DNA of 64,000 nucleotides from Auanema rhodensis. Lineage: Eukaryota; Animalia; Nematoda. The stretch spans positions 7,254,001-7,318,000 of the forward strand of contig OZ059896.1 in NCBI GenBank assembly GCA_964057225.1. Reading direction: 5' to 3'. A model generated the notes under the pieces. It was not told the DNA's origin and did no database searches. It saw only the letters and a program-made list of their open reading frames with translations. Position 1 is the stretch's first letter; each line of letters begins with the position of its first letter. Both the position numbers and the translations under genes were made by a program. Below, one piece after another: positions 40,701-64,000 of the stretch.

Positions 40701-43700
40701 CCACAGTATAAAAGAGTTATGAGTCTTTTACTACTAGCTGCATCTGTTTCTTCCGTTAAAATCTCAATCCACGACATGTGGCTGACTTTTCATTCAGCTA
40801 CTTTCTCGTAATATTGCCTCACTCAATGACCAACAAAATGCTTTGCTCTCTTCTCATATCTGATGCTGCTATTCATTATTATTATATAATAATACAATGG
40901 TGTATCTGTACCAACTAATTCGTATTTTTACAAAATAGTAGTGTCATGTAATTTTTCTAATCATGTATATACACGTATTGCTATCATGTCCTCTTTACTG
41001 CATTGTATTTACAGCTTTCCCTGACTCTGGGGCCAACAGTCAACTGAGCTTATCAGTAACTTTTATAATATCAAATAATATACTGTAAGGCACTTCTAGC
41101 TTCTAATACAACTGGTCTAGATCATCTTGAAATGTTTCTAACACTTACCGTTCTGTTATTTGTCAAATAGGCCAAAAAGGACAGAAAAAAATGTGTCATC
41201 ATCTTGACCGCTAAGAACCGGCTGGCTCAGCTGTTCGAAATGCTCTTTCTCACGTTTTTCGTTGCTGTAATGACTTGCAACATTCGGCAGAAAAAAGCAA
41301 AATTTCGTAGTTTCCTGTGGAGACCACGAGGATGGCGTAAATGTACAGGTGATGACGACGATTTGTATATAGTCTAATCTACCTTGGTAACTGAGATTTT
41401 TTTTGTTTGAAAAAATGATTTAAAAACGTCATATGTTAGGGGAGGGGGAGAAATGAAGAAAAAGAGTTGCATTGTTTATTTAGTCTAAAAAAAATATGTC
41501 CTTTTCTTCGTTGTCATCGTCTCAAATCAGAGAGTGCATCGAATACCAAATACTTCAAGACGGCGACGATTATGAAAACGAGAAAGACAACACGCACTTT
41601 TTACTAGATCCAGTTCATTTTATCTAATGAAAATTGGTATAGTCAGCTGCTCTATTGTCACCCTCATTTTCTGCTCCTCCCCTTTATCAGTGCTTGCTCC
41701 TTAATCATTATAGCCTTAGCTTTGTTTCATTTGTAATATAGTTCCGTTCTATTCCTAGGATACTATCATTCCATCTTTGTGTCTCTCTCTCCCTTTCTTT
41801 TTATCTTTTTGGTTTTGTAACTCAGCCACGCCTTATACTATAACTCCTCCCCCTATTTTGACCTCATACGGCCTATAATCAGATGTGCGAGCCCAGCTGC
41901 CGAATTGCAACACTGTTTGCAACAGCAGCTTCCGCTCTTTTTATGCAACCCGTTTCTCTTCAATTTCACACTATCTTTTAAATATTTTTTGCTTCCGCTC
42001 ATTTAGTTTGTTCCTGTTCGCACTATGATATATGTTAAGAAGGTGAGCATCTTCTGTTGATGTATGTGGCCGAGCTCATACGCTTAGAGTATCTTATTCC
42101 ACTCTCATCTTCCTGCTGTTCTCATTTCACATTAGTTTGCCTATCGTTTCCCGCTTCTCCAATACAGATTGGCGGTTTTCTTCTAATCTCTCGTTCCCTA
42201 TCTCGTTTTGACTCCTTGCTATCTTTATATCACTTTTCTCGTCGTTCTATCTCTCTTTAGCTACTGCTGGTAGTAGTGGCTTTTGCTTCATAGTATCTTC
42301 TCTGGGTCCAAGGTAAATGCCAACTGTTTACCGATCAATGTTCATTTTGTATGTTCTTTACAACCAGAGGTTTTTGCCCAAGCCATTTCATTGGGGATAG
42401 CCCAGGTCAACTGCCCAGGAACTGTTCGCAGTCATCAGCTTGCTTCGGATCTTTCTTTGCGGTCAAGGTTCATATCATTTATGCATACTTATCTTTCTGA
42501 TCGGCGTTCAGTTTTACAAATTAATCTATATTTGATTTTTTTATATTCTCTAATCATTTTATGTATTTATTCCAACAAAGGTTATGTGTGTAATTTGAGA
42601 ATAATAGACTCGAGAACATCCCGATCATCATCACCCGCCTTGCACAAATCATGATCTAATCAGCTGAAGAAATGCCCTTCGTTGCCCTGGAGTTCTAGGA
42701 AATGCCATTTATCTCTTATAAATGCCTCATCCGGTTACCCATGGTTGTCTACCGCATAAAGTGCATTCCCCTTATTGTCACTAGCGTCGAATTCCCACGA
42801 TGGATAGCCTGACCATTTAGCCACTGGTTACGTTGTGACGCGCCGACAGTGATGACAGGCGTTTTGCCCCCGGTACTGCCTGTGCGCCATTCAAGTGAGC
42901 TCATAGCCTATTGGCCTATTCGTTTTTCTATCCCCAATGACTCCTTCGACTCAATGAGTTTAGCTATGTTCTCAAGCTCTATCTAGCAGCTGTTCCTTGT
43001 TCGTTTCCATCACTTATACAGTATTTTCTGGACAGCACCAGTATTTGCCGCCCTCTCCCTCCTTTACGAAAGCGAAGGTCGTTTCTGCACCCTCTACTCT
43101 CTTGTTTGTCTGCCTGTCCTCCTTTCTCTGGCGCTCTCTTCAACGCGTGATCCCTCGTTGTCTCACATGGGTTGGCGCAGTGCCAGGCCACGCCTCTCCG
43201 CTCTCTTAGTGCTACTATGTGCTTTCCCCCATCGTCTTTTATACTCTTCATGGGGGGTCCTGTCGTCGTTGTCTTCTATTTTTTTTATTATAAAATTATT
43301 TTCTAATATCTATTCAACAGTTTTACAGTTTATTCTTATTTTACAACTTTCTTAAACCTTTTTTTTAATTTTTCTCATTGGAGATATGCCAGGATGGGCG
43401 TGGTTGCAAGGGGCGTGACTGATTTTGTGGTTACCCCATGACGTGTGTATGTATGTCCCACCCGCCTCCCGCCCATTCTTTTCTAACTCTGTTCCGTTGT
43501 CAGTGCGGACAATATTTAACATTTTAAATTTTCTTTAATAATTTAATTGCATTGTTTATATATTCCGTTATTTCTTCCCGTGTTTGATTTTGTTCTAGCT
43601 TTTATATGCGATATTATCTTGAATATTTTTCAGTTACTGAAAGTCAAGTTTGCGTTTAAGGAATTTTAAGAAATTCTTGTTCGCAACTCGCTTAATAGTT

Positions 43701-43712
43701 TGGTTTCGGTGT

Positions 43713-46700
43713 ATGTTACCTACCAAACGGAAGATGGCCGTTATACCAAATTCCAGTGAACATGCCTCAACGGGTTAGTTTTTTTTATATTTTCGGGTAT
43801 TCTATTCCTATTTTATTCTGCTGCTAATATTCAAATCTAGTATTCTTAGTGGAGATTCTGAATGCTTCAAATCCGGTAGAAGTATTTCAGAATATTCCTG
43901 ATCTAGGTCTTCTGAGTCATGCGTTTTTTCCGTGGAAAATGCCAGTCGACCTATTTGTGTTCTAGTCTAGCAAGCCAATTTCTTGTTCTACAACTTGAAT
44001 CATTTATGACTCTTGCTTAACACATTAATGATACGCTTGTATACTATTTGCTAAATATTCTGGAATACCCGATATTTCTTATATCATTTATATTATGAAT
44101 TTGTTTTGTTTTAGCTCGTGATTATTCACTTTTTAAACGCCTGTTTCACATGGGATCAGAGCTAGGGCGAGGTGGATTTGGAACTGTTTTTTCTGCCTTC
44201 AGAACTTCTGATAAATTATCTTGCGCAGTTAAATTTGTTAGCCGAAGTAATGTAACCGAATGGAGATGTGTAAGTACTTTTATTTTTTAATGTTTTTTTT
44301 CTTGGTCATGTGCACGTATTTTTTTGCCAGCATTAGTTGCACGTGAGCACTAATGCCGTCATTCGCATCAGCTGAGCATTCTAATATACATTGTTGCTCA
44401 GATTGAGTTATATGGCATTAGAGAAATGAAAAATAAAGCATTTCAACAAGACTGTTTTCAGCATGAAGGCAGAATGTTACCCCTTGAAATTGTTTTATTG
44501 GATCATTGCAATGGAATCCAAGGTGTTATAAATACTGTTGGATGGTATGAGAAGTCTGACGGATATATGATTGTCATGGAACGACCTTGCGCATCAGTTG
44601 ATCTTTTTGACTTCATTTCTGATCGTGGAAAAATTTCTGAAGATATGTCTAGAGATTTTTTCATCCAGGTACGTTGTATTTTTCACACCCTCAATGTCGA
44701 TTTGTTTTTTCATGTTTTTTTTGCAGATAGTTAACACAGTCATTGAATGTGAGAAAGTTGGTGTAATTCACAGAGACATTAAAGACGAAAATCTCGTCGT
44801 AGATATGAAGGAAGGGAAAGTTAAGCTCGTAGATTTTGGTTCAGGAGCTTTCAAGAAGTCTGGACCATACACTGATTTTGAAGGTTGGTAATTTTTTTTA
44901 TTTATGTTTACTATTTTAAATTTCTTCAATCATACTTTCTTATCTGCACATGAACAGCATTGTAGTCATGTGTTAATATTAGGCGTCCTAATGGCGCCGT
45001 GACGTTCGCTAGTTACATACTATCTGTTTCCGGCTATTTGTGCTTAATGGTTTTTGTTAATTTTGATTTTCTGTATTTTCATTGTGAAGGGGGGGGACTA
45101 AGTTCTAGGAAAGCCCTGATCATTATGTATTCTATTTAAAACGACGCCCATATTTTGGACTCGCTTTAGATGTCGAGGTCAATTCCGCTGAAGGAATGTT
45201 CTTTTGAACTAATCAATTACAATGGTCTTCTATGCAAAGGCTGGCGCCAAGGTCTTGTTCATGTGGTAGTGATACCACATCTTAGACTCTTTAGCGATGT
45301 CTTGTTAATTTATGTTTACTTGAACAATGTATCATGCTATCGCAAAATTATATTTATTCTATATTTCAATTGTGAATCCTTCTCTTTTTTCCTATTATTT
45401 TGGCTCTGGTTTTTACTTTTTCTTCGCTATGCTATTCACCTTCTTTTGGTTGCTGTTGTGGTTTGCTATTTGTCGTGCTAAGGCGGGGATAGCGAGGAGA
45501 AAGCGTTGGGTGTGATGGAGGAGCTTGCTCTCTGTTGGCGAGCAGCCAAAAGGGGCACTCTGCGCTAAAGCTGACCTCGTATGCGGGAGAAGAGCGCGCA
45601 CGTGACACACGCTGCTTTGACCCGAGGCCTTGCTATCTGAATGACCAACCCACAGACAGACGTCCCGATTGGCTATAGTGGTGGTTAATCCTGTAAACAA
45701 GTGACTAGGACGTTAGATTCCTGTCTTCTCTACCATCCTGCGACTAGCTGTTTTCCGACCTTAATTGATGCAGAAGATCGCCTAGGAGGCACAGATGGAA
45801 GTTAGTTCAAACCACCGGGAGACTAAGCATTCTAAGTACTTAATCATATACCCAAGAAGTGTTGAGCATATATGACAGCATTTGTAGTAGATTTTTTCTA
45901 CAAATGACTCTGTTTTTAGTAAAGCATGTGAATTAATTTCCCTGTAGTAGGCCCGTGCTTTGTTTATCCCTCCCTTAGATGAATTCTCCCGAACTTTGTT
46001 TATCGCTGAGATGAAAAGTGGATTGTTATCTGGTGGACATGGCATTAGCAATAGGCAGTCTAGTTGTTTTGTGCTTTGGGTCCATACTGCTCTGCTTCAT
46101 TGCCAACACTAGTTGTGGTTGCGCTAGGGTGGCCGTTGACCTCAGAGTTGTTTACCACTATCGACAAGACGACTTATTAAAGTGAGGACGCCGAACAGAG
46201 CGTCGGGTCATCTGCCACAACGTGCTCAACAGTACTAACAGGGCATACAGGATGCCAAAATTTCTCTTTGCTGATGGACGTTTAAGTTAAAGCAAAGACG
46301 TGCTATAGAATGATTCAAATAGCTCTGTCTACGGTTAATTTAACAATGCAGTAGCTCACTTAGTCACTACTTCTCTTCATGAATAGAAGAAGTTTGTAAT
46401 GAAATGAATAGCGCTGAAAAAGCTGATTTGCCAGATGGGATTTCGAGTAGATTGAGTCACAATTATATAATAGCTATGTTGGACTATTCGAGTAAGCTAC
46501 GCAATGAATTATCTAGTGCTACTTAAGTTTACTTAGGGTCAGCTGATATGAAATTTTCTTCCGAGGGTCAGCTCTGAATCACATTGTCAAACCCGACTAC
46601 GAAATATTTCACCACCCTCCGTTTTCGTCGTCTAGGCGGTCTCTGGTTGAGCGGTTGACTGTTGAAAGCACAGGACCGGTCCCTGTCTCTTCTGATTCTC

Positions 46701-48851
46701 TTCTTTCCACTAGTTGCCTGCTGCTGGAAGTTCTTCACATGCGAGGACGAAGAGGAATGAAAAAATGAAATGCGAACGATATTTATCGATTGTACTTTTG
46801 TAATAAATGGTTGTGTTCATTTACATTAAAGAATGAGCAACGTGTGAGTCTACAATAATATCAGTTACCAACAATGTTCTCATTTATTCTGATTGTTGTT
46901 TGTCAAATTGGTCAAGCATTTTCGTAGTTTTGCGACATGATTTTTATTCTGTCTTTGTTTGTCTGGCCTTTAGTTGAGCCCTACTACCTGTATTGCTTCG
47001 TTTTGATGAAAGGATAAGCTGGACATTAGTTCATTGGCCAATGTGGTCTACAGTTAAGAGAAGATCGACGATTAAGACAAAGAATGTGTGCTTTAGTGAG
47101 TGTCCGTGTGAACACACAAAGCAAATTGATCAGTTCTGCAATTACAATTGCTTCAAGCAATAGAAGCCGATGAAGGGTAAAACGTATAAGAACTAATTTT
47201 TTCGAGTTTCATGTTAGCACCTTACACACAATTGACCGTTCAGATGTCTTAAGCAATAATAACTATGAAATTAATCAATTGATATGTGTTTCAATAACGA
47301 TGATGTGATGTCTTTATAGTCTCAAATTTCTTCGAGGGCAGCCAGATTGAGCTAGTACATATGGTGCGAATCATCTGATTTTTGTTGAGACAGACAAGAA
47401 TCGTTGATGGCAAAGGTGTAGATACCAAGAGACTAATGCTCTATAAAGTGCAATTTTGAACACTCGCCACTCGCGCATGAGTCTGATCATTGTGTCTCAG
47501 TTATTCCTCTCACTATTTCTACTAATGTTGCCCTCTTGCGTTTCTCTCCCCCACTGCGCAGTACTGAATTCCTTTACTTTTGAAAAAGTGCAAATAAGTT
47601 GGCCTGGGCGGACATTTTTTCCAGCTGTCCTCGGTCGTTCACTTGTCTACAGTCCGTACCAGGCTCTTTTGTCGTGAGTGCGCATTTTCGCGCCTCGCTA
47701 CACGTGACCTGTTCGGTCACTCAGCTGATTTTAAAGTTAGAAGGAATGTAGAGGGGAAAAGTGGGAATTTAAAATAATGATCATATGTTATTAATCTTTA
47801 TATCATTCACATCCTTTTTTTCAGGAACTCGCGTATACAGTCCTCCAGAATGGATTCAACGTGGAAGTTATGATGGAATTCAAGCTACAGTTTGGTCATT
47901 GGGTATTCTTCTTTACGACATGGTCTGTGGGGATATCCCATTCAGACACGATGGTGAAATCATTGCTGGAAATCTTTTGTGGAGAGGCGATGTCTCAGAA
48001 AGTAAACAATCTCATACTTTATAATTTCTTACTTATTATTATTTAGGCTGCAAGGATTTGATCCGATGGTGTTTGAGATTCAATTCGGAAGAACGCCCAT
48101 CTCTTCAGGATATTCTTCAGCATCCCTGGATGACTGTTAAGGCTGGAAAAGAAAACTTTGCGCGACAAGAATTGAACGCTGAACGACAAAAGAAAGCTTC
48201 AGTTCCCGCTCGTCTGTGCGAGTTCCTTGCCGAGAAACCTCAGCAAATGAACCGTACAGATAATAGTTCTCGTTATCCACAACATGGAAACTATCATAAT
48301 GGAGTGCGTGGGATGAATCAACAGAATGAATCACATCTGCCCAATCATATGATGCCATCCTCCTCTGGTTTCTATGACTCCGTGCCTACTGAGCGTGTAA
48401 ATCATCCAGAATTAGTAAGTATCTTCGTTGATCTGATGTTTCTTAAAGAACGTATTTATAGGTTGAACCCAGCTGTTCTAACTCTCCCATCTCTTCCGCT
48501 ATTCCAATTGGCTCTCCCTCAAGACGTGTTCCCATCAGGGGGTTGACGAACCGAATGGAAACTAAACCCTCAACACCTAAGTTGGATGAACCCTCTACAT
48601 CAAACTCAGAAGGGGATAATTCATCTGAGACATTGACAATAATTTCAACACAAACTACGTCCGAGAATGAAGTGGCTCCTTTAACTAATAGTATTCCGCA
48701 TTTGACATTGCGCCCTAACCATCGGCGCACAGGGTCTTTGGGTTCATGCAATCTGTTATCTGCTCATTCCAGTGGAAACTCATCTGGGTACAGTACTTCA
48801 TCGGCTAGCCCACCTATGTCATCAGGCAATATAGTTTTGGGCTCTTATTAA
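43713..48851 (+). CDS. Pim-family Ser/Thr kinase, about 504 aa, with a long Ser-rich C-terminal tail
   Basis: Exons 43713-43773, 44115-44269, 44462-44668, 44727-44883, 47825-48001, 48047-48414, 48462-48851 (1515 nt, frame-consistent, GT-AG). Motifs: [13 protein letters not shown], Pim hinge [61 protein letters not shown]. The first exon and start codon are less certain. Confidence 0.93.
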
Positions 48852-49433
48852 TGTATACGATATATCGGAAAACTCGCTCCAAATGTCTTTTCCTTTTCTT
48901 TCTGTCCCAACCTCTCAGTTTCTTTGTCTCACTCTCGGCACTTCTATATTCCAAATCTTCAAAGAGCTTTCGGAGGTATTGCCGTGGTTGTGTTTTATCC
49001 CGGTTTTTTCTGCCTTGCTCATTACGGAGAGTTACGATAAACATTTCGTTTAGAAGTATTATTACCTCCGTTTCATTTTCGGGCTTTTGTACATAAGTTT
49101 TTCTCTTTCTATCTGCATTGAGCAGAATTGTATATAATCAATTGTACATTTTACATTTTGTTAGTTTTACACTGTTTATTCTATAGATGCTTTTGTATTA
49201 TAATGTATATTACATATATCTTACATATATATTATGTATATATATCTATATAGATATATAACGCACCTACCTTGTTTTCAAACTGACTCCTTATTTATTA
49301 CTTATTTGTGCTATACATTTTTAATGGATTAGAAACAAATATAAAAGTCAGTTCTTCCCTTGCTCAGTAATCACATGAATGTAGTTTATTAATTTAAATT
49401 TAAATGTATGTGAATACAAAATATATAAATAAA
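48852..49433 (+). promoter_or_regulatory. Probable AU-rich 3' UTR of the Pim-like gene, with PUF-type elements and a poly(A) signal
   Basis: TGTACATA at 49088, TGTATATA at 49129 and 49235, ATTTA motifs near 49293-49402, AATAAA at about 49428. Confidence 0.45.
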
Positions 49434-51630
49434 ATATATCTATATAATTAATTATACATGTATCTTTACTGTTTTACAACAAGAGGTATGGAAATGGAAA
49501 AATTTATTTGCGCAAAGTACCCAGAGCCATATCCTTGATGTACGTGAATATGTTGTATAACCGGATCTGTTTAATAAATGTCAGTTTTATACCGTGTTTT
49601 CTTTGTTGTATGGGTTGTCGTTTATCGATGTGGGGGGTCTTAGAAAGTCCAAAAAGATATTCCTCTGCGATCGTAATGGATTTAGTCCGGTCGTCGTTAT
49701 TCTTTTCTTCATGGGGGTATCAGACCTCCTTTTTATTGCTTTTAAACTTACACGGTCATGCCTAAGTGCTAAAAGCAAGACAAGCAAAAGAGGTACAAGA
49801 AGACAGTTAAAATGGATCACCTCGCAATTGTTGAGAATGGTTTACGATCTCATGTTATTTTGTCTGACTTAATGGGCTTAGAGAATTCTGAGAACATTTG
49901 TTGGCTTATGTAATCTGCTGTCCGTATGAAAGAGAACTAGTTTCCGGCCAGAGCAATGCTTGATCTCTTTCTCAGTACATACATCAGAAACAGTTTTTCG
50001 AATAGCACCCTACTGTCTATCAGTAACATACATATGTATGTCTCTTTGCTACGTATGGTAGAGTCGTCAACTAAATCTCTGTTGAGTAAAGAACACCACT
50101 ACAACAAGTGCCTTAAGGGCAAGGCTAGGTTGTTTTCAAGCTCTAAAGGAGAAGCTGGGAGCAGGCGGTCAGGCGCTCAACTGTCCTTATTTGGTGTGCA
50201 CGGGAAGAGCAGTATTAGTACTTGAAAAGCTATTGAAAGACTACTTCTAAAAGAGCTTCGGCACATTTAGCCGGATGTGAAACTGGATTTTATTTGATAT
50301 TTGAGAAGCCATTTCGAAAAGCAGGCATATATAATGGGCACATCGTGTTCATCATTAGATAAGAACGATGGGTTTTCCGGACAAAAGAATAGAATAAGGA
50401 AAAAACGTTTTTGAAAAAAAATTTTAAGAACACGTGGGAGAAGCTTGATTCAGAGATGTCCTCTATGACCTTCTTCTCGTTTGCCTTGAATTCGTTTGTC
50501 AGCAACGTCATCCGAGCAGGTTTTTGAGTGGTTACATCAGCTGTGTCGACGGAACTTTTAGCTTAGAGGTCGAGCATGAGCATAAATGATTTAGCATTCC
50601 GAGAAACTCACGCATTCCTCCTTTAGCTAGTATTCGTTCATCTTTCTTTTCTCCGCTTTTTCCTCTTGCCAAAGCTTTAACAGAAGCCTAATGAACATAT
50701 TCGCAACATGGGTACTTACTCAAAGCCCGCCTAGAGAAAAAAGGAAAACGAAAAGAAAGAAAAAGGGAAGAGCTGGCTAGACGACAAATTGAAAATATCA
50801 ATGAGTGCGTCTATAGTTTGACTATCTCAGTTTTGAATGCGTAATATAAAAGATCACAGATGCGTATCTTTAAGAAAATATTAAATGTTTTTATGTAGTT
50901 TACCCAATTCTTCTTTAGAAATATATCAAAGCATACTATATTATATGTATCTATCTATATATATATAGTATATACTTCTAACAATAGGTATTACTCACCC
51001 CAATAAAAGAACGTCGAGATTGGTTGGTTACATGTACATGAGTATATGAAAATAGGGAAGAATGTCACATTTCAATCTGATATGCATGCATTCATATACA
51101 GAAACTGAATATGCTATCGTAGATTAACCAGAGTTCATGACCTAGGTTTCTATTGATTCACTTAGTCATCCTAATAAATCATCAAAACATGTTCTTGAAA
51201 TATAGTTTATATTACTTAAACCTTTATTCTGTTTCAGAAAAAGAATGACGTGGCACAGAGATGAGCCTACACATCATTAAATAAGTCAGAAAACATATGG
51301 TGTTAGCGGGGGTGCGGAAGAAAAATCAACAGTAGCATGATGATGAGGGCACAATCCAGGGAATGTTTCATTAATACTGGTCACAAAACTAGCTCATAGT
51401 ACCTGTCAGCTGATTATATTAGTCATAATAACTGCTATGTATGATTTTTTTTAGTTTATATTTCATGTTCTTAATATTGTTTTTACTATTTTTCATCAAG
51501 TGTTTCACCATTTAGATCGACGAATGTTTTAAACTAGAGCGATCATCAAGTGTCATGGAAAAAGAACAGTTCGCTAAACAAGAGCTGTGAGCAGTAGAAT
51601 GCTGGCTAACCAAAAAAAACCGGTTTACAG

Positions 51631-52021
51631 ATGCAAAATGAGGAGAAAGTTGTGCAATATTGCCGCGGTTCCGTAGTTTTGTCGGAGCTTAAGCTGGCGG
51701 CGCGTCATTAACATCACATATCGTGCTACTAAGCCTTACGGTTTTGAATACCAAATTGGAAAATATTCCATTGTTTTTACTTCAGAAAATCTATTTCTTC
51801 TCATGTAAAGCTTAGATCATGATGAAATATTTTGCCAGTTGGAGAAAAGAAAACAACGTTCTAAATTCCGGAAGATCACATGTAATTCGGAGCTTCGTCG
51901 GCACTCTCTCTCTCTCTCTCTCAGATTTTGTATATATAACTGAAAACAAAAGAAATTATATACTACATTACAAATTTTCTTATTAATCATCTCTTTCATT
52001 ATGTTTTTTTGCTAATTGATG
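51631..52021 (+). repeat. 391-bp direct repeat, copy 1
   Basis: Identical by eye to 53717-54107 (offset 2086), including the (TC)9 tract. The ORF track shows the same 60-aa ORF in both copies. Confidence 0.97.
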
Positions 52022-53716
52022 ATAGCCAATCTTCAAACAAGACGGCTAATACTGAGCTAAAGCTAAAAAGACTTCGTGCGCACGTGAACAGAACACAAAT
52101 AGTAGAAGCTGCTATGTTGCGAAGGCGGCTTTGCAAAAAAAAGCTTCAGAAGTAAAGCATATGTTGAATCATTCGCCTCATTTTCCAAACAATGACTGAC
52201 TCACCACTCTAAAAGTGCGCTGCAATTCAGAAAATGAAAAGCAGATGATCATTCAGTGTCGAACATGCGGGTTGTTGAAAACGCATGACATCATTTCCAA
52301 ATAAGGCGTTAAGATGACTCATTCTCGATTGGTCTATCTCATCGTCTCTTTCAAATAACTAAGAGGGTGATGATCGAATAGAATGAAACACGTATCTGAT
52401 AATGCATAGAGTTCCAATCTTAACTGAGGGTCTATGATTTTAGAAATCTATGCCTCGTCCAATGTGATCATAAAAACTCATAAAACGTGACGGTAAGACC
52501 TAGCAATAGCGTTGATCTCCTGTGGCTAATTTATGATCGAGAACACTACACTCATTGCAGGCATATCAGTGTTACTATCTCTCTTGTCCCTTTTCTCTCC
52601 CTCGATGTCTATTATGGTGTTATGGATTTTCTTTCTTTCAGCACACAAAAGATAATCGGTCCTAAATACGGTGTATGCAAAAGGATTGATGAAAGGATAA
52701 AGTTAAAGGGATCACTACCTATCTATATCTAAAGCCTTCTGTATAGCATACTTTTCAATACAATTCGTTAGTATACTTCCCAAACAAAATATTTAATTTG
52801 AAGAAACACAAAAATTTAAGAATTTAAAATGTTTTTATAGTTGAATTCTACATGAAATTTCAAACAAAAAGAAAACTATACATCTACATATATGAATGTC
52901 CTAACAATGATACTTGTAATTTGAGTTCTATTTTTATTTCTTCAAAATATTTCGATTATACATTCTAGACGTGTAGTGTAGGTATAAGTCTGACGAGAAT
53001 TTTTTCTTCCCGGAAGCTTCACCATTATCGCATCCCTCTGGCATACAAAGAACGACACTTACGGAAGCGGGGTTCTTTGCCACAATAAGGGGTTAGCTAG
53101 CACGCAAGTAGCTTCCGTCCTATGACTCTCTTTCGTTTAGCTAACTATACAGGGATTTCTAATGACTGTAATGAGGCTAAGAGCCGGCAATCATATACTG
53201 TAATCCTAAACTAAACAAGTAGTGGTCTATAGAACTGTGTACTTAGAAATACTAAGGGCAACATAACAGTACTGCGATATTGCCTGTGCTTCCGATGTGC
53301 TTTCTCTCAATTTATCTCAACATCTAGAGGAAATGTCAAGCAAATAGTGGAAGCGAGTGGGATTAGCAACTAAGCACACCGAAGCTAGTTCGTTTTCTCT
53401 GTGATTACGCAGGTTAATATTGCGACAAAAGTGAAGTAGCCTTTATATAATGCAAAAAAACAAGCACATAATAATTAAGGATTGGAAAATGAATATATCA
53501 ATAATTTTTAGCTTCAAACAAGTTTTCTTCTTTGTCCGTATACAGCAATAGATATTGGAATGTTGCAATACCTTTTAATAGTATATATGCATATATGCTT
53601 ATACATAACATATGCATATACATTTACAATATAAAAACATTAAAAGATATGTACATTTTACTGTTAAATATACACACTTTTTCTGTTTTATCAAGTGATA
53701 TTTTGAAGATAAATAT

Positions 53717-54107
53717 ATGCAAAATGAGGAGAAAGTTGTGCAATATTGCCGCGGTTCCGTAGTTTTGTCGGAGCTTAAGCTGGCGGCGCGTCATTAACAT
53801 CACATATCGTGCTACTAAGCCTTACGGTTTTGAATACCAAATTGGAAAATATTCCATTGTTTTTACTTCAGAAAATCTATTTCTTCTCATGTAAAGCTTA
53901 GATCATGATGAAATATTTTGCCAGTTGGAGAAAAGAAAACAACGTTCTAAATTCCGGAAGATCACATGTAATTCGGAGCTTCGTCGGCACTCTCTCTCTC
54001 TCTCTCTCAGATTTTGTATATATAACTGAAAACAAAAGAAATTATATACTACATTACAAATTTTCTTATTAATCATCTCTTTCATTATGTTTTTTTGCTA
54101 ATTGATG
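53717..54107 (+). repeat. 391-bp direct repeat, copy 2
   Basis: Identical by eye to 51631-52021. Confidence 0.97.
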
Positions 54108-56533
54108 GCAAAACAATGATAAGACTTTTAGGTTGTTGCTCTTCCAGTCAAACATAATTGGAGTTTGGGACTTATCATCTGTCCGACTCGTAATCCGCAT
54201 ATTTATAGGATGTCTTCTGTATCTTTCATGATGCCATCGCTGGATTATCGGAAAAGATATCTAGTCAGGTCATGGCCTTCCATATCACACAACTATTCAA
54301 TTATGAAGAGATCAAAGTGCTAAGAGAGGAATGCGAACAGTGTTCAAACGAACTACCGATTGGAGAAAATATCAAAAATCAATGAATAGCCTTCACAAGG
54401 ATTTATAATATATGGTGTTTGGATCAACACTAAAGTTTATAAATCCTTCAAATTTGAGTGTGTCAGTTACAATATGCGGTTGACAGACGAAGGCTGAAAC
54501 GAGTTAGGTTGGTTAGAGACTAGTCCGTATATCTATCAACCTCAGCCATGGCAGACAACAGTTGTCTAGTGAAGAAAATAAAGTATCATTTTCGTTATTT
54601 ATATGCCAAAAAGATAAAAAAAACTAACTTTTAAACTGTAATTAAGATATTAATACTGGAGATTATTCAGAAGAATGTTCAATGAATAAACGAACGCTAA
54701 AGCATATTCCGGGTGGTTTAAGACACGCATCTAAGTATTCGCATGAAAATATCGTATGAATAAATTTTATTTTGACAGCATTTACTCCAAGACTTAATTT
54801 CCTATACATCTTTCATGAGGAAATCAAATTTCAAATGTGAAAGTTGGATGTTTGAAGAAGGATAAGAGTGATCAGACATTGATATGAAAGGCAATACAAG
54901 GACAACTTTTGAATGTTCAATTGAATATCACTTAATTGTTTTTTCTTTGATTTCTCATTTAAAAATATTATATTGAACAATGAATAGGTCAGATATTCGC
55001 CATTACTAAAAATAAAAATGTTGTTTTGCAAAATAAAGGATAGTACCATGTCTTCTCTCTAAGCGCATTTGCATGATCTACTTCGAATAATCCCTTTTCC
55101 AATTGCCGGGTTTTCATGAATATGTGACAAACATGGACTCCGCTATATTACAAAAAGGGTATATGATAGAAGAAAGTGACAATACACGTTTATTGGGTTC
55201 ATTTTGGCTTGTTTTTTTTTAGTTTTTCTATCAAATGAATGAAGGATTTTGGCCTGTTGTCATCGCGAGAGGAACAGCCTTGACGATCAACTCCTTGACA
55301 TTTCCGCTGGCATGTTAAATCATCAGAGGAATTAGAGAAATTCGTGGATATGCTTAATCGTGCCACTTCCTCCTTAGTAACAGTAAATAGAACTCTATTG
55401 TATTTCATCCTAACGGTTAAAGATTTAATTGGTAAACGCAATCTCTCTCTACCATTGTTCTTGAGCAGATTGCAGTTTTATGATTGCTAAACTATTACTG
55501 AAAACACTCATAAAGCACGAGGAGCTTTCAAATTCAAGAACAACAGTTCTTCATATAAAGTTTCACTGGCTTGAAGCAAGTTTCTCTCCGGGGACCACCC
55601 TAGAGCATCAAACTATGACAAGCAGCATGCAACCTTCAACTTCCGTAGAAAAGAGAATGGCAAATCTTTTTTCAAACGCGCGGGACTGCCTCCTTCTATT
55701 TCTCAGTTGAACCCTAAATATTCTTTAAACCTCATGGCGCTTCTATGAACCATACATCATGAGCTAGTTCACAATTTGCTCCAACTATTCAAGAACACAT
55801 TTGTCTTTTCCTAGACTTGTAGTCTGAGCTAGCCCGGAAACTCATTTTTTCAATACATAATAGCATAGTTGGTTAGCTTACTATGTGAGAAAATGGTCCG
55901 AACCGAACCAATATGCTCTTGAAAAAGCAAACTGCACTTTCCGTAAGTAAACACGTTTTCCTTGAGATTGCTTCCTATACCTATTATTCAACTGTGGCCG
56001 CCACGAGGCAAGAATAAAAAAAGAAAGAAGGGTGTATATGTGAAAAGAAGAGACAGAGAGAGCGAACGAATCGTTTTGACCCATCGGTATTTGGTTGGTA
56101 GAGGTTGTGAAGCTGACGGTCGACTAGAAGTCTGCCGCTTGCCGATGGAGACCGGAAAACGGCTGTCTAGTTTTCTTTCTCTCTCTCTCCTTCTCATTCG
56201 AGTCTCTTCTCTTCGCGAAGAATGAACGAGAGGAGGCTGGCACTGCCTGGAACATGACGCGGCGGCGGACGGCAAAGCCAAATGGCGCGCAATTTTACTC
56301 TTTTCCACACACACACGAACATACAAAAAGCGGGGCCTAGTAGTCGTTATATCAGGTCCTGAGGCAAAGAGAGTGGATAAAAAACATGACACTAGCACTA
56401 CCAGTGCAGTGGTAGAAGCAAATAATTTTACAACGAGCCAAAAAATAATCAAGCATTCATAAGTGCAAGCGTTGGCACACAGGGCTAAAAAGGAAACATG
56501 AGGCTCAGTTACTATGATATGAAAACGAACATG

Positions 56534-56740
56534 AAGCAATGTTGACAAGAAGGAAAAGGAAATCAAAGTGGCTGTGAAATGAAAAAAAACGCTTGATATG
56601 GTTGATAAAGTATAGTTGATAGTATGATATAAGACTAATATCCATATTTCTCTATATAATTTAAAAGAAAATGAATATGTCGTTATCAACATATCAAATT
56701 AATTTGAATTGAATATACTGTACCTACAGTACTTCAGAAA
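56534..56740 (+). repeat. 207-bp inverted repeat, left arm
   Basis: Reverse complement of 61488-61694 with two substitutions seen (56581 and 56654). Confidence 0.97.
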
Positions 56741-58029
56741 ATCCACGCTTTGAAATTATGTTCCGCCATTTGGTTTAAAAAAATAAAAATAAGAAAACAT
56801 ACAAGTGCAAAAAAATACATTCAATTTAATATTTATTATGGATATTATAGGCATGTATCGTTTTTTAATGTTCTTTATTCGTCAGCTTAAAAAAAAGTTA
56901 TACTCGATAATAAAAAGTTTCAACATCAAATATAAGAAGTACTCGGAGGCGTGGGAAAAAAGCTTCATGACTAATTTTTGTACAGACTATAAATAAACGC
57001 ATTAGTTTCAGGAGATTTGAATTTTTTATCTCTTTGGTCAATCGAATTAAAAATGATAAAAAAAATAAAGTTACATATCAATGATTCAAAAAAAAGATGA
57101 AATAAAATATTAATATTGGAATTATAAGGAAGAAAAACAGGTAATTGTTCTGAACTAAAGTGTCATTTTAAAAAATTATATCTTAATTAGTGTTTGCACT
57201 TAATATCTACTATATTGTATTCCCCAATTCAGATTATCTTTAGATTAAATTTTCCCTGTGTTTCGGACAAAATATTAATTTTCATTTCAAATTGGATGGT
57301 ATTTACAGTAATCATTCGTAAAAATATCCTGAAATTTCTAAAAAATAGAAAACTTATCAAACTGTAAGGGATTAGTGAAATTTGATTATTACCTGACTAC
57401 TTGATTATTTTTTTGTTATAGTTGAACGAAAAAATATCATATAGTATTGGAGAAGATTTTTGAAATTTTCTTAGGCGTGACATTTAAACTTTGTGAATAT
57501 TTCCCACGTTTTTTTAACTTTCTATATTATTCTCAAACACATGAACAAATTTTTTTTCAAAAACTACAAATTTTCTCAGGTTATGTCTCACACCTTGATA
57601 TGCCTAAAGGAAAGTGAGACTTTTTAAAAATAATTCTTACGTGTGCGAGTTCCCACCGATAAATAAAGATTATGATATGGATCTTCATTTTTAAAATAGA
57701 AAATAAAATAGAACAATATATTGAAAAATAACTTTATAATGAAACTAATAAAATATATTTTAATAAATTATAAAGCAATGAATTTTAAAATGAATTAAAT
57801 GATCAGAAAGGGCTAAGCTAGAAGTGACCGCTTTGCCTGATGTTTAACAGCGGTGCATGGTGTTTATGTTGAAGATCTATGTCGAGTTGTGCATTTAACG
57901 GTCAATTACAAAAAAACTATCAAGATATTGATAAGTATTTAGTTTTAGTCAATTGCATAACCTTTATCGTTTTTTCATCAGTTTGTTGAATTAACTTTTG
58001 TATCGTTTCTTTTAAGGGTAACATCAAAA

Positions 58030-61000
58030 ATGGCTGATATATCCTTGCTCGGATTGTCAGAACAGAAGACTAAAGAAACTTTAAAAAATACTGCATTAGT
58101 TAAAACTTTAGCTACTATTATTGAAGCTGCTCAAGCTGAGTTGAAAGCTAAGAATATACAGATTAGTAAAACTCAGGTTTTTTTAAATTATAATATTTTT
58201 AACTAGTATTTCTGTTACAGGGAACTCTTCTATATCAGCTTGGAACTAAGATTAAGCCACAAATTCACCAACATGCCGCAGTTGTTGCAAAATATATTGT
58301 CAATGATGGAATAAAATCTGAACTTCAGGTTATTGTTTTCAATGTATCTCTGTTAAAAATAGTGTTTTGCAGATTACGGCAGTCATCGAATACTTGTTAG
58401 CTAATACTGTTAATGAACTAGATATCAAGGGTTTAGAAGCTGCTGGTGGTATTGGAGTTGTTGTTACTCCTGATCAAATTGAAGATGCTGTAAGTCAAAT
58501 GAAATTTACTTTTGGTTAATAACTCATTCTTAGGTCACAGCTGTATTCAAAAAATATCGCGATCAATTGATTGCTGAGCGGTACTCTTTCAACGTCGGAA
58601 AAGTTTTAGGAGAAATTCGTGCTCTTCTTCCATGGGCTGATGGAGCTTATGTGAAGAAAGAAGTTGATCTTCGATTACTTGAACTTCTAGGTGCTAAAAC
58701 TGCCGAAGATTTAGCGCCTAAGAAGAAGGTTGGTCATTTTGGTTTTAAATTGATTACATCAATTTTGTATTTTTAGGTGAAAAAAGAAGAGAAGCCAAAG
58801 GAGAAGAAAAAAACAACGACAACAGAAGCAGCTGAAGAGCCACAAGGAGCAGCTACTATTGAGGAACTTATGCGCACCAGAGCTAATTTCCATAAAGTAA
58901 GCCATCAGCTTAATATATATTCACTGTTTTCTTTATACAGGTTGGAGAGAATTTCACATCTGATGGATATGTCACAACACCTTTGACCAAGGAGCTTATT
59001 CGTAAGCATTTAGAAGCTACTGGTGGCAAAGTAAATTTATTTTTCATGTTTGAATTTTGTTCATAAATGATATTAAGGTAGTCACGCGGTTCCCACCTGA
59101 GCCCAATGGTGTTCTCCATATTGGTCATGCTAAGGCTATTAACATTAACTTTGGATATGCTAAGGTTTCAAATTACTTATATATTTCTGAAAATGTGCAT
59201 AATATAGGCTCACAATGGTATTTGTAATCTTCGTTTCGATGATACCAATCCTGAAAAGGAGGAAGAGAAATTCTTTACTGCTATTGAAGATGTTGTTAGA
59301 TGGCTAGGTTTGTATTTGATTTAGCCAAAAAAAATTGATTGATATATTCAGGATATTCTCCTGCCAAGATCACCCACTCTTCTGATAATTTTGACCAGCT
59401 TTATAAGGTTAAACTATTTTTTGTTTTTATTTTTTATTGCTTGTTGTTTTAGTGGGCTATTGTTTTAATTAAGAAGGGGTTAGCTTATGTATGTCATCAA
59501 AAAGTAGAGGAAATGCGTGGATTTGATGTCCAGCTTTCTCCATGGAGAGAGAGACCAATTGAGGAATCTCTGCAACTCTTCGAGGTATTTGAAATTTAAG
59601 TTTTCTTTTTATTTGTTTCTTTGAGGATATGAAAAATGGTAAATTTGACGAAGGGGAAGCTACTCTTCGTTTGAAGTTAACTTTGGAGGAAGGAAAAGTT
59701 GACCCTGTAGCCTACAGAATTAAATATGTTGCTCACCATAGATCTGGTGATAAATGGTAAACTTTCTTAATATTTCTTTTTATTATTGTTTTAAATATCA
59801 GGTGTATTTACCCTACCTATGATTACACTCATTGTCTTTGTGATTCCATTGAAAACATCACTCATTCTCTTTGCACCAAAGAATTCCAATCCAGGTCTAG
59901 TTCATGTTTTCTTATATTAGGCATAGTTTTAATATTTTCAGAAGAAGTAGTTATTATTGGTTATGTAATGCTTTGGATATTTATTGCCCAGTTCAATGGG
60001 AATATGGTCGCCTCAATGTTAATTACACTGTTGTTTCAAAGAGAAAGATCTTAAAACTTATCACATCGAAGATTGTCAAGTAGTTTACCTTCAGCTATAC
60101 GATTATTATATATATTTTTTAGTGATTGGGATGACCCAAGACTTTTCACTCTTACTGCTCTTCGTAGACGCGGTATCCCTGCTGAAGCTATCAATATCTT
60201 CGTAGCTAAGTTGGGATTAACCATGAGTCAAATGGCCATTGATCCTCAACTACTTGATGCTACTGTACGTGATTATCTCAATACCACTGCTCCAAGGTTC
60301 GAAGTAACTACTGTTCTTATTCTGCAATTTTTGATTTTAGAACAATGGTAGTGTTGGATGGTTTGAAGGTAGTTATTGAAAATTACGACGATTTGAAATT
60401 GCCCAGCACTGTATCTGTTCCTGATTTCCCATCTACTCCAGGAACTTCTGCCAATCATGAAGTTGCATTTGATCGCGTTATATACATTGAAAAATCCGAT
60501 TACCGCCAGGTACTTAAAAGCATTTTATTACCTCATAATTTTTATATTTCAAGAATAACGAAGAAAAGAGCTTCCGACGCCTTACCAAATCTCAGCCTGT
60601 TGGGTTGAAGCATATAGGAATTCTGTTGACTGTTACTAAGGAAGAAATAGTGCGATAATATATTTCATAATGCAATAGTTTATTCTCTACTTGTTCAGGA
60701 TGCTTCCGGAAATATCAAGGAATTAATAGTCAAGGCTGTTCCTTTGTCTGACGATAATAAACCAAAAGCTTTCATTCATTGGGTTGCAAAGCCAAAAACT
60801 GCTGAAGTTAGAATATACGACCAACTGTATGTTTATTATCTTCAATTCAATTTACTAATATATTGTTGTAGATTCAAGCATAAAAATCCTGAAGATGCTA
60901 CTGTGGTTCCTGGTGGATTCCTAACTGATATCAATGAGGTTAAATGTATAAAACATGAGTCAAATTAATACTTTATGTTTTAGAATTCATTGACAGTCAA

Positions 61001-61207
61001 CTACAATGCACTTATTGATAAGTCTGTTGCAAACTCCAAGATTTATGATAGATTCCAGTTCGAGAGAATCGGATACTTCAGTGTTGATACTGATGCCACC
61101 CCTGGAAAGGTTTTTAAAATCTCATATAAGCGTTAAACAATTTACTTTTTTTTCAGCTTGTCTTCAACAGAACCGTTGGGTTAAAGGAAGATTCTGGGAA
61201 AAACTAA
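58030..61207 (+). CDS. qars-1: Glutaminyl-tRNA synthetase (class I, eukaryotic type with N-terminal domain), 774 aa, 20 exons
   Basis: Exons 58030-58176, 58221-58328, 58373-58489, 58534-58728, 58777-58896, 58941-59030, 59078-59164, 59208-59307, 59352-59407, 59453-59584, 59626-59756, 59802-59894, 59942-60079, 60123-60296, 60341-60509, 60554-60649, 60699-60826, 60872-60938, 60984-61109, 61157-61207 (2325 nt). Motifs: [84 protein letters not shown]. Likely trans-splice acceptor TTTTAAG ends at 58016. Confidence 0.97.
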
Positions 61208-61487
61208 GAATTAGGTTACCAGTAATTATTCGGTGATGTCATGATAAACAACTTGTTTTTTTTTTGTTGTTTCATAGCATATCTTTCAGATTGTTATTTT
61301 GGGAAATTGTTTTAATATGGGCTTATATTGCATCTTAATAAATATTGTTTTAAAGAATCAATCGTTATTATTTTTTATCATTATTTATTATTTTTCTTAA
61401 AAATTGCAAAGTTCATTGTATTTATAGAAAAATAATAGAAATTAATAGAAAGTTTTCATACAAATCTTTGCATTAAAAAATTAAAAC

Positions 61488-61694
61488 TTTCTGAAGTACT
61501 GTAGGTACAGTATATTCAATTCAAATTAATTTGATATGTTGATAACGACATATTCATTTTCTTTTAAATTATAAAGAGAAATATGGATATTAGTCTTATA
61601 TCATACTATCAACTATACTTTATCAACCATATCAAGCGTTTTTTTTTATTTCACAGCCACTTTGATTTCCTTTTCCTTCTTGTCAACATTGCTT
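61488..61694 (-). repeat. 207-bp inverted repeat, right arm
   Basis: Reverse complement of 56534-56740; begins about 280 nt after the GlnRS stop codon. Confidence 0.97.
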
Positions 61695-61852
61695 AAAAAC
61701 ATATTAACTAAAGAGAAATACTTTAGTTGCTTAATGGAAGGAACAATGGTTTTAGATTTATTGATAAGACGATGAAAACTTATGAATTAAATAAAGCCGG
61801 TTTATCTCCGGTGTATCCAGAAGGTGTTGTAATGGATGATGGTATTCGCATA
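61695..61852 (+). mobile_element. Maverick/Polinton remnant: C-terminal fragment of protein-primed family B DNA polymerase (frameshifted)
   Basis: KNILTKEKYFSCL, then a frame change near 61733, then NGRNNGFRFIDKTMKTYELNKAGLSPVYPEGVVMDDGIRI. This resembles the N-GFR...TY...K-GLS--Y-K--V-DDGI tail of Polinton pPolB as I recall it. Intronless. Confidence 0.65.
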
Positions 61853-61993
61853 TTCTTGCAGTTCTAATGGAGGATCAAGTCCAAAAGAATCAAAATAATG
61901 TATTTTATCTTTTATATTGGAACAACAAACCCAATGAGTTTTTTTATTATTTGAAGAATCTAAATTTACAATTCCTTCTTCTCTTGCACTTTT
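61850..61993 (-). mobile_element. Maverick/Polinton remnant: adenain-like cysteine protease fragment
   Basis: KSAREEGIVNLDSSNNKKTHWVCCSNIKDKIHYFDSFGLDPPLELQEY matches the GIVNLD-S---GTHW...YFDSFG--PP-E signature, including the catalytic His and Asp. The N-terminus and the Gln/Cys half are missing. Confidence 0.8.
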
Positions 61994-63069
61994 TAGTGCT
62001 TCGAAAATTCACTTATTTTTCACTTTTTTTCAAAAAAGTGTTGTAAATGCGGTAATTCTCTGATTTCAGAGAATGAAAATGTGTCTAAAACGGTTGAAAT
62101 GTCGAAATGGTATTATAAACCCTCGTATATATACTACTAATTATTTTTCAAAAGCAATTACAATATCCATCTGCTATTTCTGAAATTGATTCCCAGGTGA
62201 GAATCAAGAAAACAGCTTTGTGCTTCATTGATAATATCAAACATCTGCCATTTGGGAAAATTATCAAACAGATTTTTTTAAAGTAACAATTATTGTCAAC
62301 TTATATATATTTTGATGGGAAATATATCATTATATATTATTAACATACGGAAGTTTTCAGATATACTTATATTCCATTTCTCCATCAAATAAGAAAAATA
62401 TTTTTGCGAATAACAATAAAGCTCCTGTTTTATAGTTCACTTCCTTTAAAGTATAGTTTTTATAAATATAATTATCTTTTAATTTCATAAACATAAATAA
62501 ATCTTGTTTTAAAATTTAATTAATTTTGTTGCAGATAAGTTTACATACATACTTACATAAATAGATTACAAAATCCTAGGAAACATAAGACATGAAAATT
62601 AAAATACAGCACTACTGTACACATCTTTGGTATTTGCTTTATATTAAGGAAGATTATTGAAAATAAATATAAAGATGATGACTAGCATAACGTTTTAAAT
62701 TAAAACTCGTTTAAAGCTTGAATAATATGAAAGTGCTCATGCGACTGATCTGAGACCATGACAAAAAATAGAAAAAGAAGAAGAATATCACCCGTTTCTT
62801 GTATTCTCCAAAAAAGAGACGGATTTTTGAAATTATTTTCTTCAAATAATTGGTACATAATGAAAATGTAACGAATTGTTGATCTTCATGTACATAAATA
62901 AATAAATATGAACATTGAAGAGATGAGTTTTTAAAAAATATATATATAACTGCTACTTCAATATATGGCAACTGAGTAATATGCTCATGAGGGAGAAAGA
63001 AGTGAGAATGCATTTTTGACTAGAATAACAATGATTTTGATCATAAAAGTGTTAATTATGAGATGTTAA

Positions 63070-63731: not shown

Positions 63732-64000
63732 CTGTAAAAAGAAAAATATAATATAATACAATATAATATATATATTAAGACGTTATTTTGTTCCTAGACA
63801 ATGATTTTTGATCGAAACAAATAGGAAAATATGCTGTTTCGTCGTTTATTTTTTTAAACAAAAAATTCATTATACGAAAAATGGATTGAAATTTGGGAAG
63901 AAAAACATATAGCATGAAATTATATCGGGATATAGAATATAAAATCGGCTTTTACCGGAATTTTCTTGTTTTTTTCCCAGCTATTTTCTAAAAGATTTTT

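What the first reader, a model, noticed from the sequence alone, without database searches (positions are those of the whole stretch)
56534..61694. A complete essential tRNA-synthetase gene enclosed by 207-bp near-perfect inverted repeats
Seen: 56534-56740 and 61488-61694 are reverse complements with two mismatches. They enclose about 4.7 kb holding only the GlnRS upstream region, all 20 exons and the 3' UTR. The outer end of the right arm meets Maverick-derived sequence at 61694/61695. Established: staggered-break inversions leave inverted duplications at both breakpoints, TIR elements can capture genes, and inverted repeats allow the enclosed DNA to flip by recombination. Inference: this is a recently inverted, relocated or mobilised housekeeping-gene cassette, possibly polymorphic in orientation.
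Basis: partly seen in the sequence, partly recalled or inferred. Interest (0 to 1): 0.8.

Follow-up and report, generated by a model that had tools for sequence, protein, structure and literature searches.

The report
Inverted GlnRS gene with breakpoint repeats
In this nematode a 4.7-kb piece of chromosome holding only the essential glutaminyl-tRNA synthetase gene lies flipped relative to a sister species, between two near-identical 207-bp inverted repeats and beside a decayed leftover of the gene's old copy, which is the known footprint of a small inversion rather than a captured or mobile gene.

Summary
The 207-bp inverted repeat is real: 56534-56740 against 61488-61694, 205 of 207 bases, 4747 nt apart. 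Its ends are sharp, it has no target-site duplication, and there are only two copies in the window. It encloses one intact GlnRS gene of 20 exons and 773 aa, and nothing else recognisable.

The closest available relative is Auanema melissensis (strain JU1783). There GlnRS lies tail-to-tail with a kinase gene. In the window the kinase and about 4.5 kb of conserved non-coding blocks are collinear with that species, but GlnRS points the other way.

A minus-strand relic of the ancestral gene's 3' part (54153-56335, probably up to 56533) still sits in the old place and ends at the left arm. The order is relic, arm, upstream region plus exons 1-15, exons 16-20, arm. This is the order the staggered-break inversion model predicts.

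One problem remains. The relic and the gene are about 31% diverged, while the arms are 1% diverged. So either gene conversion keeps the arms alike, or there were two events: an old partial duplication and a recent inversion.

No tool supports the claim that the right flank is Maverick-derived, and nothing supports capture or mobilisation by a transposon. This is a new member of a known kind, of moderate interest.

The parts
56534..56740 (.). Left arm of the 207-bp inverted repeat (GC 0.27). Its outer end abuts the GC-richer relic of the old GlnRS copy.
61488..61694 (.). Right arm of the inverted repeat. It starts 280 nt after the GlnRS stop codon and 146 nt after the AATAAA signal ends.
56741..58029 (+). 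AT-rich upstream region of GlnRS (GC 0.26). It has no recognisable gene, RNA family or homology to the sister species' upstream region.
58030..61207 (+). Intact glutaminyl-tRNA synthetase gene with 20 exons, introns of 41-49 nt and 773 codons. All Pfam domains are present in order, together with HIGH and KMSKS-type motifs.
61208..61487 (+). 3' UTR and downstream flank of GlnRS, with AATAAA at 61337-61342.
54153..56533 (-). Relic of the 3' part of the ancestral GlnRS copy, collinear with the A. melissensis gene. It holds pieces of that gene's long introns 19, 17 and 15 and of exons 16-17. Homology is detectable up to 56335. The stretch 56336-56533 has the same GC content as the relic (0.40) but no detectable homology. 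Exons 1-15 are absent and exons 18-20 are not detectable.
55217..55465 (-). Degenerate copy of exon 16, intron 16 and exon 17 within the relic. It is about 69% identical to 60548-60798, and the reading frame is not kept.
56150..56335 (-). Conserved non-coding block inside the relic, 76% identical over 186 nt to part of intron 15 of the A. melissensis GlnRS gene, with a much better conserved core. It is absent from the 44-nt intron 15 of the live gene.
49000..53388 (.). Non-coding blocks collinear with the region between GlnRS and the kinase gene in A. melissensis, on the opposite strand to GlnRS. They fix the ancestral orientation.
43393..48924 (+). Protein kinase gene, orthologous to the kinase that lies tail-to-tail with GlnRS in A. 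melissensis.
61805..62008 (-). 68-aa stop-free stretch in the right flank, with a cysteine-protease-like pattern by eye only. This is the only candidate for the 'Maverick-derived' claim and it is unconfirmed. No gene of such an element can be delimited, so there are no breaks to count.

Best explanation
The GlnRS cassette has been turned round by a small inversion in this lineage, and the 207-bp arms are the inverted duplication left at its breakpoints.

Shown:
- In the sister species the gene lies tail-to-tail with a kinase gene.
- Here the kinase and the intervening conserved blocks are unchanged.
- A dead 3' fragment of the gene remains in the old orientation.
- The live gene lies just beyond it in the opposite orientation, between the arms.

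Inferred, variant S. One event with two pairs of staggered breaks turned the ancestral order A B C D E F into A B E' D' C' B' E F. B is the 3' part of GlnRS: the old copy decays as the relic, and the new copy B' stays joined to exons 1-15 as the live gene. E is the 207-bp arm. Gene conversion between the arms then has to explain their 99% identity.

Inferred, variant T. An old tandem partial duplication made the relic. A recent inversion of the live gene, with a 207-nt stagger at one breakpoint, made the arms. I cannot decide between S and T.

In both variants the arms are by-products of breakage and repair, not transposon ends. Being inverted repeats, they could allow further flipping of the cassette by recombination.
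For: - The repeat is real, discrete and two-copy.
- The closest relative's locus, L001 from A. melissensis, has GlnRS(+) followed by kinase(-).
- GlnRS matches the window on the same strand. Everything downstream of it (L001 15043-24393) matches window 53393-43393 on the opposite strand, in collinear order.
- Window 54153-56335 matches L001 14282-12604 (introns 19, 17 and 15 and exons 16-17) on the opposite strand, collinear with those blocks. So a relic of the old orientation is present in situ, which polarises the change to the window's lineage.
- GC drops from 0.40 to 0.27 exactly at the outer end of the left arm, as expected if the relic abuts the arm.
- L001 has no such repeat or relic and no assembly gaps.
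- In exons 16-17 the relic shares 30 sites with the live gene and 21 with A. melissensis. This fits a duplication after, or near, the species split.
- There is no target-site duplication.
- The staggered-break model and its predicted product are described in PMC1885836.
Against: - The ages disagree. Relic against live gene is about 69% identical; arm against arm is 99%. One event therefore needs arm-specific gene conversion, for which I have no direct evidence. Two events need a second break close to the first junction.
- The arm has no detectable homologue in the sister locus, so its ancestral single-copy position is unknown.
- The sister species' upstream neighbour, an MFS transporter gene, is not seen in the 2.3 kb to the right of the cassette, so the right breakpoint cannot be checked.
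- The live gene has short introns 15, 17 and 19, where both the relic and the sister gene have long ones. This requires later intron shrinkage.
- Only one relative was available, and a more distant one (Mesorhabditis) shares no synteny.
Confidence: 0.6

Rival explanations
1. The inversion with partial duplication is old, and the arms have nothing to do with it. In this reading they are a recent short templated copy: a break repaired by copying 207 bp from about 5 kb away in inverted orientation. The same kind of process would have made the perfect 391-bp direct repeat nearby.
For: A second young, sharply bounded, two-copy local duplicate lies in the same 10 kb: 51631-52021 and 53717-54107, 100% identical, with no flanking homology. 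The arms are at least 30 times less diverged than the relic.
Against: It does not explain why the two copies fall just where the inversion model puts its junctions. One lies at the end of the relic, marked by a GC step at 56533/56534. The other lies just past the gene's poly(A) signal.
Confidence: 0.15
2. The arms are terminal inverted repeats of a transposon. This could be a gene-capturing TIR element, a composite of two short elements, or the ends of a Maverick-type element, and it would have carried or could carry GlnRS.
For: The geometry fits: inverted repeats bracket a single gene. The arm also has a modest internal hairpin on one strand (z = -3.2).
Against: - No target-site duplication of any length flanks the arms, although they are young.
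- Each arm lacks terminal repeats of its own.
- There are no other copies in 64 kb or in the sister locus.
- No transposase or integrase lies inside.
- The Maverick claim found no support.
- The relic shows the gene is at its ancestral locus, not at a new one.
Confidence: 0.07
3. The repeat is an assembly artefact, for example from mis-joined haplotypes that differ in orientation or from a chimeric read.
For: Two perfect or near-perfect short duplicates lie in one 10-kb stretch. The locus could not be checked in an independent assembly of the same species (one search was blank, and there was no same-species protein).
Against: The arms differ at two internal positions, so they are not one sequence used twice. 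The window has no gaps. The gene between the arms is intact, and the inverted orientation is independently implied by the relic.
Confidence: 0.05
4. An ancient whole-gene inverted duplication predates the species split and was followed by reciprocal loss. A. melissensis kept the old copy, and this species kept the inverted one. The arms would be a later, separate feature.
For: The live gene, the relic and the A. melissensis gene are nearly equidistant in exons 16-17. The live gene lacks the long introns shared by the relic and A. melissensis.
Against: A. melissensis shows no trace of a second copy within 10 kb on either side. The relic shares slightly more sites with the live gene than with A. 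melissensis, 30 against 21.
Confidence: 0.08

Closest known systems
Inversions with inverted duplications at both breakpoints (staggered-break model; Drosophila melanogaster species group, Ranz et al. 2007, PMC1885836)
   Same: The segment is inverted relative to a sister species. The breakpoints carry inverted duplicates of non-repetitive sequence, including a partial gene copy that becomes a pseudogene. The order relic, arm, inverted segment, arm equals the predicted A B E' D' C' B' E F. There are no transposon hallmarks.
   Different: The inverted segment is only about 4.7-5 kb and holds one essential gene. The organism is a rhabditid nematode. The two duplicate pairs differ about 30-fold in divergence, which the simple model does not predict.
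Inversions made by ectopic recombination between inverted transposon copies, or by alternative transposition (e.g. maize p1/p2 inversions, PMC8225341)
   Same: Inverted repeats lie at both breakpoints, and the enclosed DNA can flip.
   Different: The arms show no transposon features: no target-site duplication, no terminal repeats of their own, no coding capacity and no further copies in the window. The relic is a duplicate of host gene sequence, which that mechanism does not produce.
Gene-capturing TIR elements (Pack-MULE type) and cargo-carrying Maverick/Polinton elements
   Same: A host gene lies between inverted repeats.
   Different: The gene sits at its ancestral locus with all introns and next to its own relic. 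No target-site duplication or element genes were found. Membership features were tested and not met.
Inverted-repeat arms kept alike by intrachromosomal gene conversion (e.g. sex-chromosome palindromes; from my own knowledge)
   Same: Arm-to-arm identity is very high beside much older neighbouring sequence. This is what variant S requires.
   Different: The arms here are 207 bp, not kilobases to megabases. Conversion is inferred, not shown.

Membership tests
Staggered-break inversion with breakpoint duplications | The segment is inverted relative to the ancestral gene order | tested here: met
   GlnRS lies on the same strand as in L001, while the kinase and conserved blocks lie on the opposite strand. 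A relic of the old orientation is present in situ.
Staggered-break inversion with breakpoint duplications | Inverted duplicates of otherwise single-copy, non-repetitive sequence at the two ends of the inverted segment | tested here: inconclusive
   The arms are two-copy in the window and absent from L001. Genome-wide copy number and the ancestral single-copy site could not be examined.
Staggered-break inversion with breakpoint duplications | With two staggered breaks, an interleaved order B E' ... B' E, both pairs being of the same age | tested here: inconclusive
   The order is met: relic, arm, exons 1-15, exons 16-20, arm. Equal age is not met: 69% against 99% identity.
Staggered-break inversion with breakpoint duplications | No transposon or target-site duplication at the junctions | tested here: met
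   The flanks were read directly and no matching direct repeat adjoins the arms. No flank homology was found.
TIR transposon or gene-capturing element | Target-site duplication flanking the terminal inverted repeats | tested here: not met
TIR transposon or gene-capturing element | Multiple related copies in the genome | not testable with these tools
   Only the 64-kb window and two loci of other species were available. No extra copy was found there.
Maverick/Polinton-derived sequence (right flank, 61695 onward) | Recognisable element genes: protein-primed polymerase, integrase, packaging ATPase, capsid proteins, cysteine protease | tested here: not met
   Pfam on 20 stop-free stretches gave no such family. 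The PDB search was blank, the word search was blank and the model had low confidence. I had the adenovirus-type protease of Mavericks in mind, and no named hit came back.
Recombination-driven invertible segment (flip by exchange between inverted repeats) | Both orientations present among individuals or reads | not testable with these tools
   No reads or second assembly of this species could be reached.
Glutaminyl-tRNA synthetase (class I) | N-terminal R1 and R2 domains, catalytic domain and two anticodon-binding domains in order, with HIGH and KMSKS-type motifs and an open frame | tested here: met

The most novel reading that the evidence does not exclude
The 207-bp arms may be old breakpoint duplicates kept identical by ongoing exchange, so that an essential single-copy housekeeping gene sits in a naturally invertible cassette that is polymorphic in orientation. 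In this reading the dead 3' relic survives because it holds the gene's former intronic regulatory block, which now lies upstream of the flipped gene.
Probability: 0.12. Interest if true: 0.6.

Novelty: new member of a known kind. Interest (0 to 1): 0.4.

Why it matters
This locus is an unusually legible example of how small inversions arise. The sister-species order, the in-situ relic and both breakpoint repeats all survive within 8 kb, around a gene that cannot be lost. It extends a mechanism documented for large Drosophila inversions to a gene-sized event in a nematode.

It also raises two testable questions. The first is whether short inverted repeats can be kept identical by conversion for long periods. 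The second is whether a partial gene duplicate can persist because it carries a regulatory block. For annotation, the 54-56.5 kb stretch should be called a GlnRS pseudogene fragment, and the cassette should not be called a transposon.

Tried and rejected
- An exact look-up of the 234-aa ORF that spans the left arm's outer junction was blank. It may simply not be a called gene.
- Word searches with full-length nematode GlnRS proteins found no protein of the window's own species or of any Auanema other than A. melissensis. Strain or second-species comparison was therefore impossible.
- The Mesorhabditis GlnRS locus has no kinase neighbour and is useless as an outgroup.
- Rfam (gathering threshold on the whole window, E-value mode on 55400-58050) and the tRNA scan found nothing.
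- The bacterial promoter and terminator scan is not informative for a eukaryote.
- I searched for older homology beyond the arm ends, between the arms and the sister locus, and between the gene's 3' flank and the relic's downstream region. All were at shuffle level.
- I tested for an old tandem duplication around the 391-bp direct repeat and found none.
- For the Maverick test of the right flank, Pfam (twice), the PDB and the word search were blank, and the AlphaFold model was poor. I ran no fold search because the model's confidence was too low.
- One Pfam call failed because of my coordinate slip. I corrected it and re-sent it.
- I rejected the idea that the arms are remnants of a symmetrical palindrome of two whole gene copies. 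The arm mapping (coordinate sum 118228) and the relic mapping (coordinate sum 116013) are offset by 2215 nt, and the order of the pieces is not mirror-symmetric.
Full report
1. THE OBSERVATION

The two arms, 56534-56740 and 61488-61694, are reverse complements over 207 nt with two mismatches (56581/61647 and 56654/61574). They are separated by 4747 nt. A sensitive BLASTN of the arm against the window finds only these two copies, at E about 1e-103, and everything else is AT-rich noise.

Homology ends abruptly at all four ends. Local alignments of the 600-nt outer and inner flanks, in every pairing and orientation, score no better than shuffles. No direct repeat flanks the arms, so there is no target-site duplication. 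The arm has no terminal repeats of its own. One strand folds somewhat better than shuffles (z = -3.2) because of an internal imperfect hairpin. Its 15-mer occurs nowhere else in the window.

2. WHAT IS ENCLOSED

The plus strand carries a complete GlnRS gene. Searched exon by exon by reference, Pfam gives these domains in collinear order:
- tRNA_synt_1c_R1, profile positions 6-162;
- R2;
- the catalytic domain, positions 1-314;
- the two anticodon-binding domains.

A splice model with GT-AG introns gives 20 exons, introns of 41-49 nt, consistent phases, no stop in any split codon and 773 codons. The gene runs from ATG 58030 to the stop at 61205-61207. I checked the phases exon by exon and did not build a joined sequence. 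I sent no joined 20-exon model to any search tool, so that step was left out.

HIGH and KMSKS-type motifs are visible in the exon translations. The 1289 nt upstream and the 280 nt downstream (AATAAA at 61337-61342) hold nothing recognisable.

3. WHOSE GENOME, AND THE SISTER LOCUS

An exon-sized query cannot reach full-length relatives in the word search. I therefore used the single large search on the exon-14 stretch. The best named hits were nematode GlnRS proteins.

A word search with one full-length hit, followed by local tblastn of all retrieved proteins against the window, ranked P0159 first. P0159 is the GlnRS of Auanema sp. JU1783. It matches at 70-97% per exon and is co-linear from residue 1 to 779. 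JU1783 is Auanema melissensis (PMC9984802).

No closer protein exists in the collection. The window therefore comes from a related species that is not represented there. That it is a congener is an inference.

The A. melissensis locus (L001, no gaps) reads MFS transporter(+), GlnRS(+), then a kinase(-) tail-to-tail with GlnRS.

4. THE KEY RESULT

GlnRS in L001 matches the window on the same strand. Everything downstream of it, L001 15043-24393 (conserved non-coding blocks and the kinase), matches window 53393-43393 in collinear order on the opposite strand. Relative to the kinase, GlnRS is therefore inverted between the two species.

The collinear minus-strand series also continues into the gene itself.

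| Window | L001 | What it is in the A. melissensis gene |
|---|---|---|
| 54153-54294 | 14282-14148 | intron 19 |
| 55060-55094 | 13612-13578 | intron 17 (weak match) |
| 55234-55461 | 13441-13220 | exons 17 and 16 |
| 56150-56335 | 12779-12604 | intron 15 |

The spacing of these pieces is similar in the two species. The window thus still holds, in the ancestral place and orientation, a decayed 3' fragment of GlnRS.
- Exons 16-17 of this relic are about 69% identical to the live copy at 60548-60798. Intron 16 is included, so the relic is a DNA-level copy, not a retrocopy.
- Exons 1-15 are absent, and exons 18-20 are not detectable.
- Detectable homology stops at 56335. The next 198 nt have the relic's GC content (0.40), and GC falls to 0.27 exactly at the outer end of the left arm.
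- The A. melissensis locus has neither the relic nor the repeat.

The relic polarises the change. The A. melissensis arrangement is ancestral, and the window's orientation is derived.

5. MECHANISM

The observed order is: blocks, relic (B), left arm, upstream region and exons 1-15, exons 16-20 and 3' flank (B'), right arm, right flank.

This is the product A B E' D' C' B' E F that the model of two pairs of staggered breaks predicts (PMC1885836). B is about 2.4-2.9 kb and E is 207 bp. The model also explains why the live gene is whole: C' and B' stay contiguous. It explains why the relic was truncated from birth.

The difficulty is age. B and B' are about 31% diverged, while E and E' are 1% diverged. 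The three-way comparison of exons 16-17 gives 30 sites shared by relic and live gene and 21 shared by relic and A. melissensis. The relic is therefore old, perhaps about half as old as the species split (a rough inference). Without conversion, the arms are tens of times younger.

Two variants remain.
- Variant S: one old event, with the arms since kept alike by gene conversion. This is natural for the geometry but is not shown.
- Variant T: an old tandem partial duplication made the relic, and a recent inversion of the live gene with a 207-nt stagger made the arms. This explains the ages but needs a second break close to the first junction. Breakpoint reuse is reported in PMC1885836.

I rate 'inversion with breakpoint duplication', S or T together, at 0.6. 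That the cassette is inverted relative to its ancestral orientation I consider nearly certain.

The live gene's introns 15, 17 and 19 are 44-47 nt. In the relic and in A. melissensis they are several hundred nt. The live copy's introns must therefore have shrunk after the duplication.

6. RIVALS

- A separate recent templated copy, unrelated to the inversion. A second young two-copy duplicate nearby makes this plausible, but it does not explain the positions of the arms.
- Transposon ends or gene capture. There is no target-site duplication, no element genes and no further copies, and the gene is at its ancestral locus.
- Assembly artefact. The two internal mismatches and the intact gene argue against it, but no independent assembly was reachable.
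- An ancient whole-gene duplication with reciprocal loss. No trace of a second copy is seen in A. melissensis.

7. THE MAVERICK CLAIM

I could not confirm it.
- Twenty stop-free stretches right of the arm gave no virus or transposon family in Pfam. The only credible hit was a SPRY exon of a host gene at about 63425-63550 on the minus strand.
- The 68-aa stretch 61805-62008 (minus strand) shows by eye a His-Trp ... Asp-Ser-x-Gly pattern. I associate this with adenovirus-type or Ulp1-type cysteine proteases, which is a lead from memory, not a test.
- For that stretch the PDB search and the word search (length-limited) were blank. The structure model was too poor to search with.
- No gene of such an element can be delimited, so there are no breaks to count.
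- The right flank has no similarity to the rest of the window or to L001.

8. STEPS LEFT OUT, AND A SLIP

I did not scan public contig collections with the arm or the right-flank sequence. The finding likens that flank to a virus-like element of animals, and fetching such elements by pattern or look-up is barred. This is listed under referred steps.

9. VERDICT

The inversion reading is supported and sharpened by the sister-species comparison and the relic. The mobilisation and Maverick readings are not supported.

This is a new member of a known kind, a gene-sized inversion with breakpoint duplications. Interest is moderate (0.4) because the footprints are unusually complete and the age mismatch is unexplained.

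Noticed in passing
window 51631-52021 and 53717-54107: A perfect 391-bp direct repeat, 2086 nt apart, with sharp ends and no flanking homology. The second copy lies where exon 20 of the GlnRS relic would be expected. The interval it occupies is as long as in A. melissensis (765 against 766 nt), as if it had replaced rather than added sequence. Its origin is unexplained: a repair copy, a conversion or an assembly issue.
   Followed up: partly
window 56150-56335 (minus strand) and L001 12604-12779: This non-coding block is conserved better than the neighbouring relic exons: 76% over 186 nt, with a core of roughly 100 nt that is far better conserved. In A. melissensis it lies inside GlnRS intron 15. 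Here it lies in the relic, 1.7 kb upstream of the flipped live gene, and it is missing from the live gene's 44-nt intron 15. It may be a regulatory element retained in the dead copy. No Rfam match was found.
   Followed up: partly
window 58030-61207 versus L001 10001-14530: All 19 introns of the window's GlnRS are 41-49 nt. The A. melissensis gene has the same 20-exon structure, but three 3' introns (15, 17 and 19) are about 700, 360 and 390 nt long.
   Followed up: yes
window 56534-56740, minus strand (the same as the plus strand of the right arm): The arm folds into a long imperfect hairpin (z = -3.2, 1 of 200 shuffles as good). Its significance is unknown.
   Followed up: partly
window 49000-53388: Several non-coding blocks between the kinase gene and the GlnRS relic are 70-81% identical to A. 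melissensis, as high as coding exons. This suggests conserved regulatory or non-coding RNA elements.
   Followed up: no
window 63425-63793 (minus strand): An exon with a SPRY-domain match (E = 4.5e-5) indicates a host gene at the right edge of the window. It has no counterpart within 10 kb of GlnRS in A. melissensis.
   Followed up: no
window 2500-34000, many sites: Abundant CT/GA and TA microsatellite-rich stretches dominate the repeat families found in the left half of the window.
   Followed up: no
literature (bioRxiv 10.64898/2026.08.27.747507): A related species, Auanema rhodense, undergoes programmed DNA elimination at sites marked by a 29-base palindromic motif. I did not test whether this window lies in retained or eliminated DNA.
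   Followed up: no
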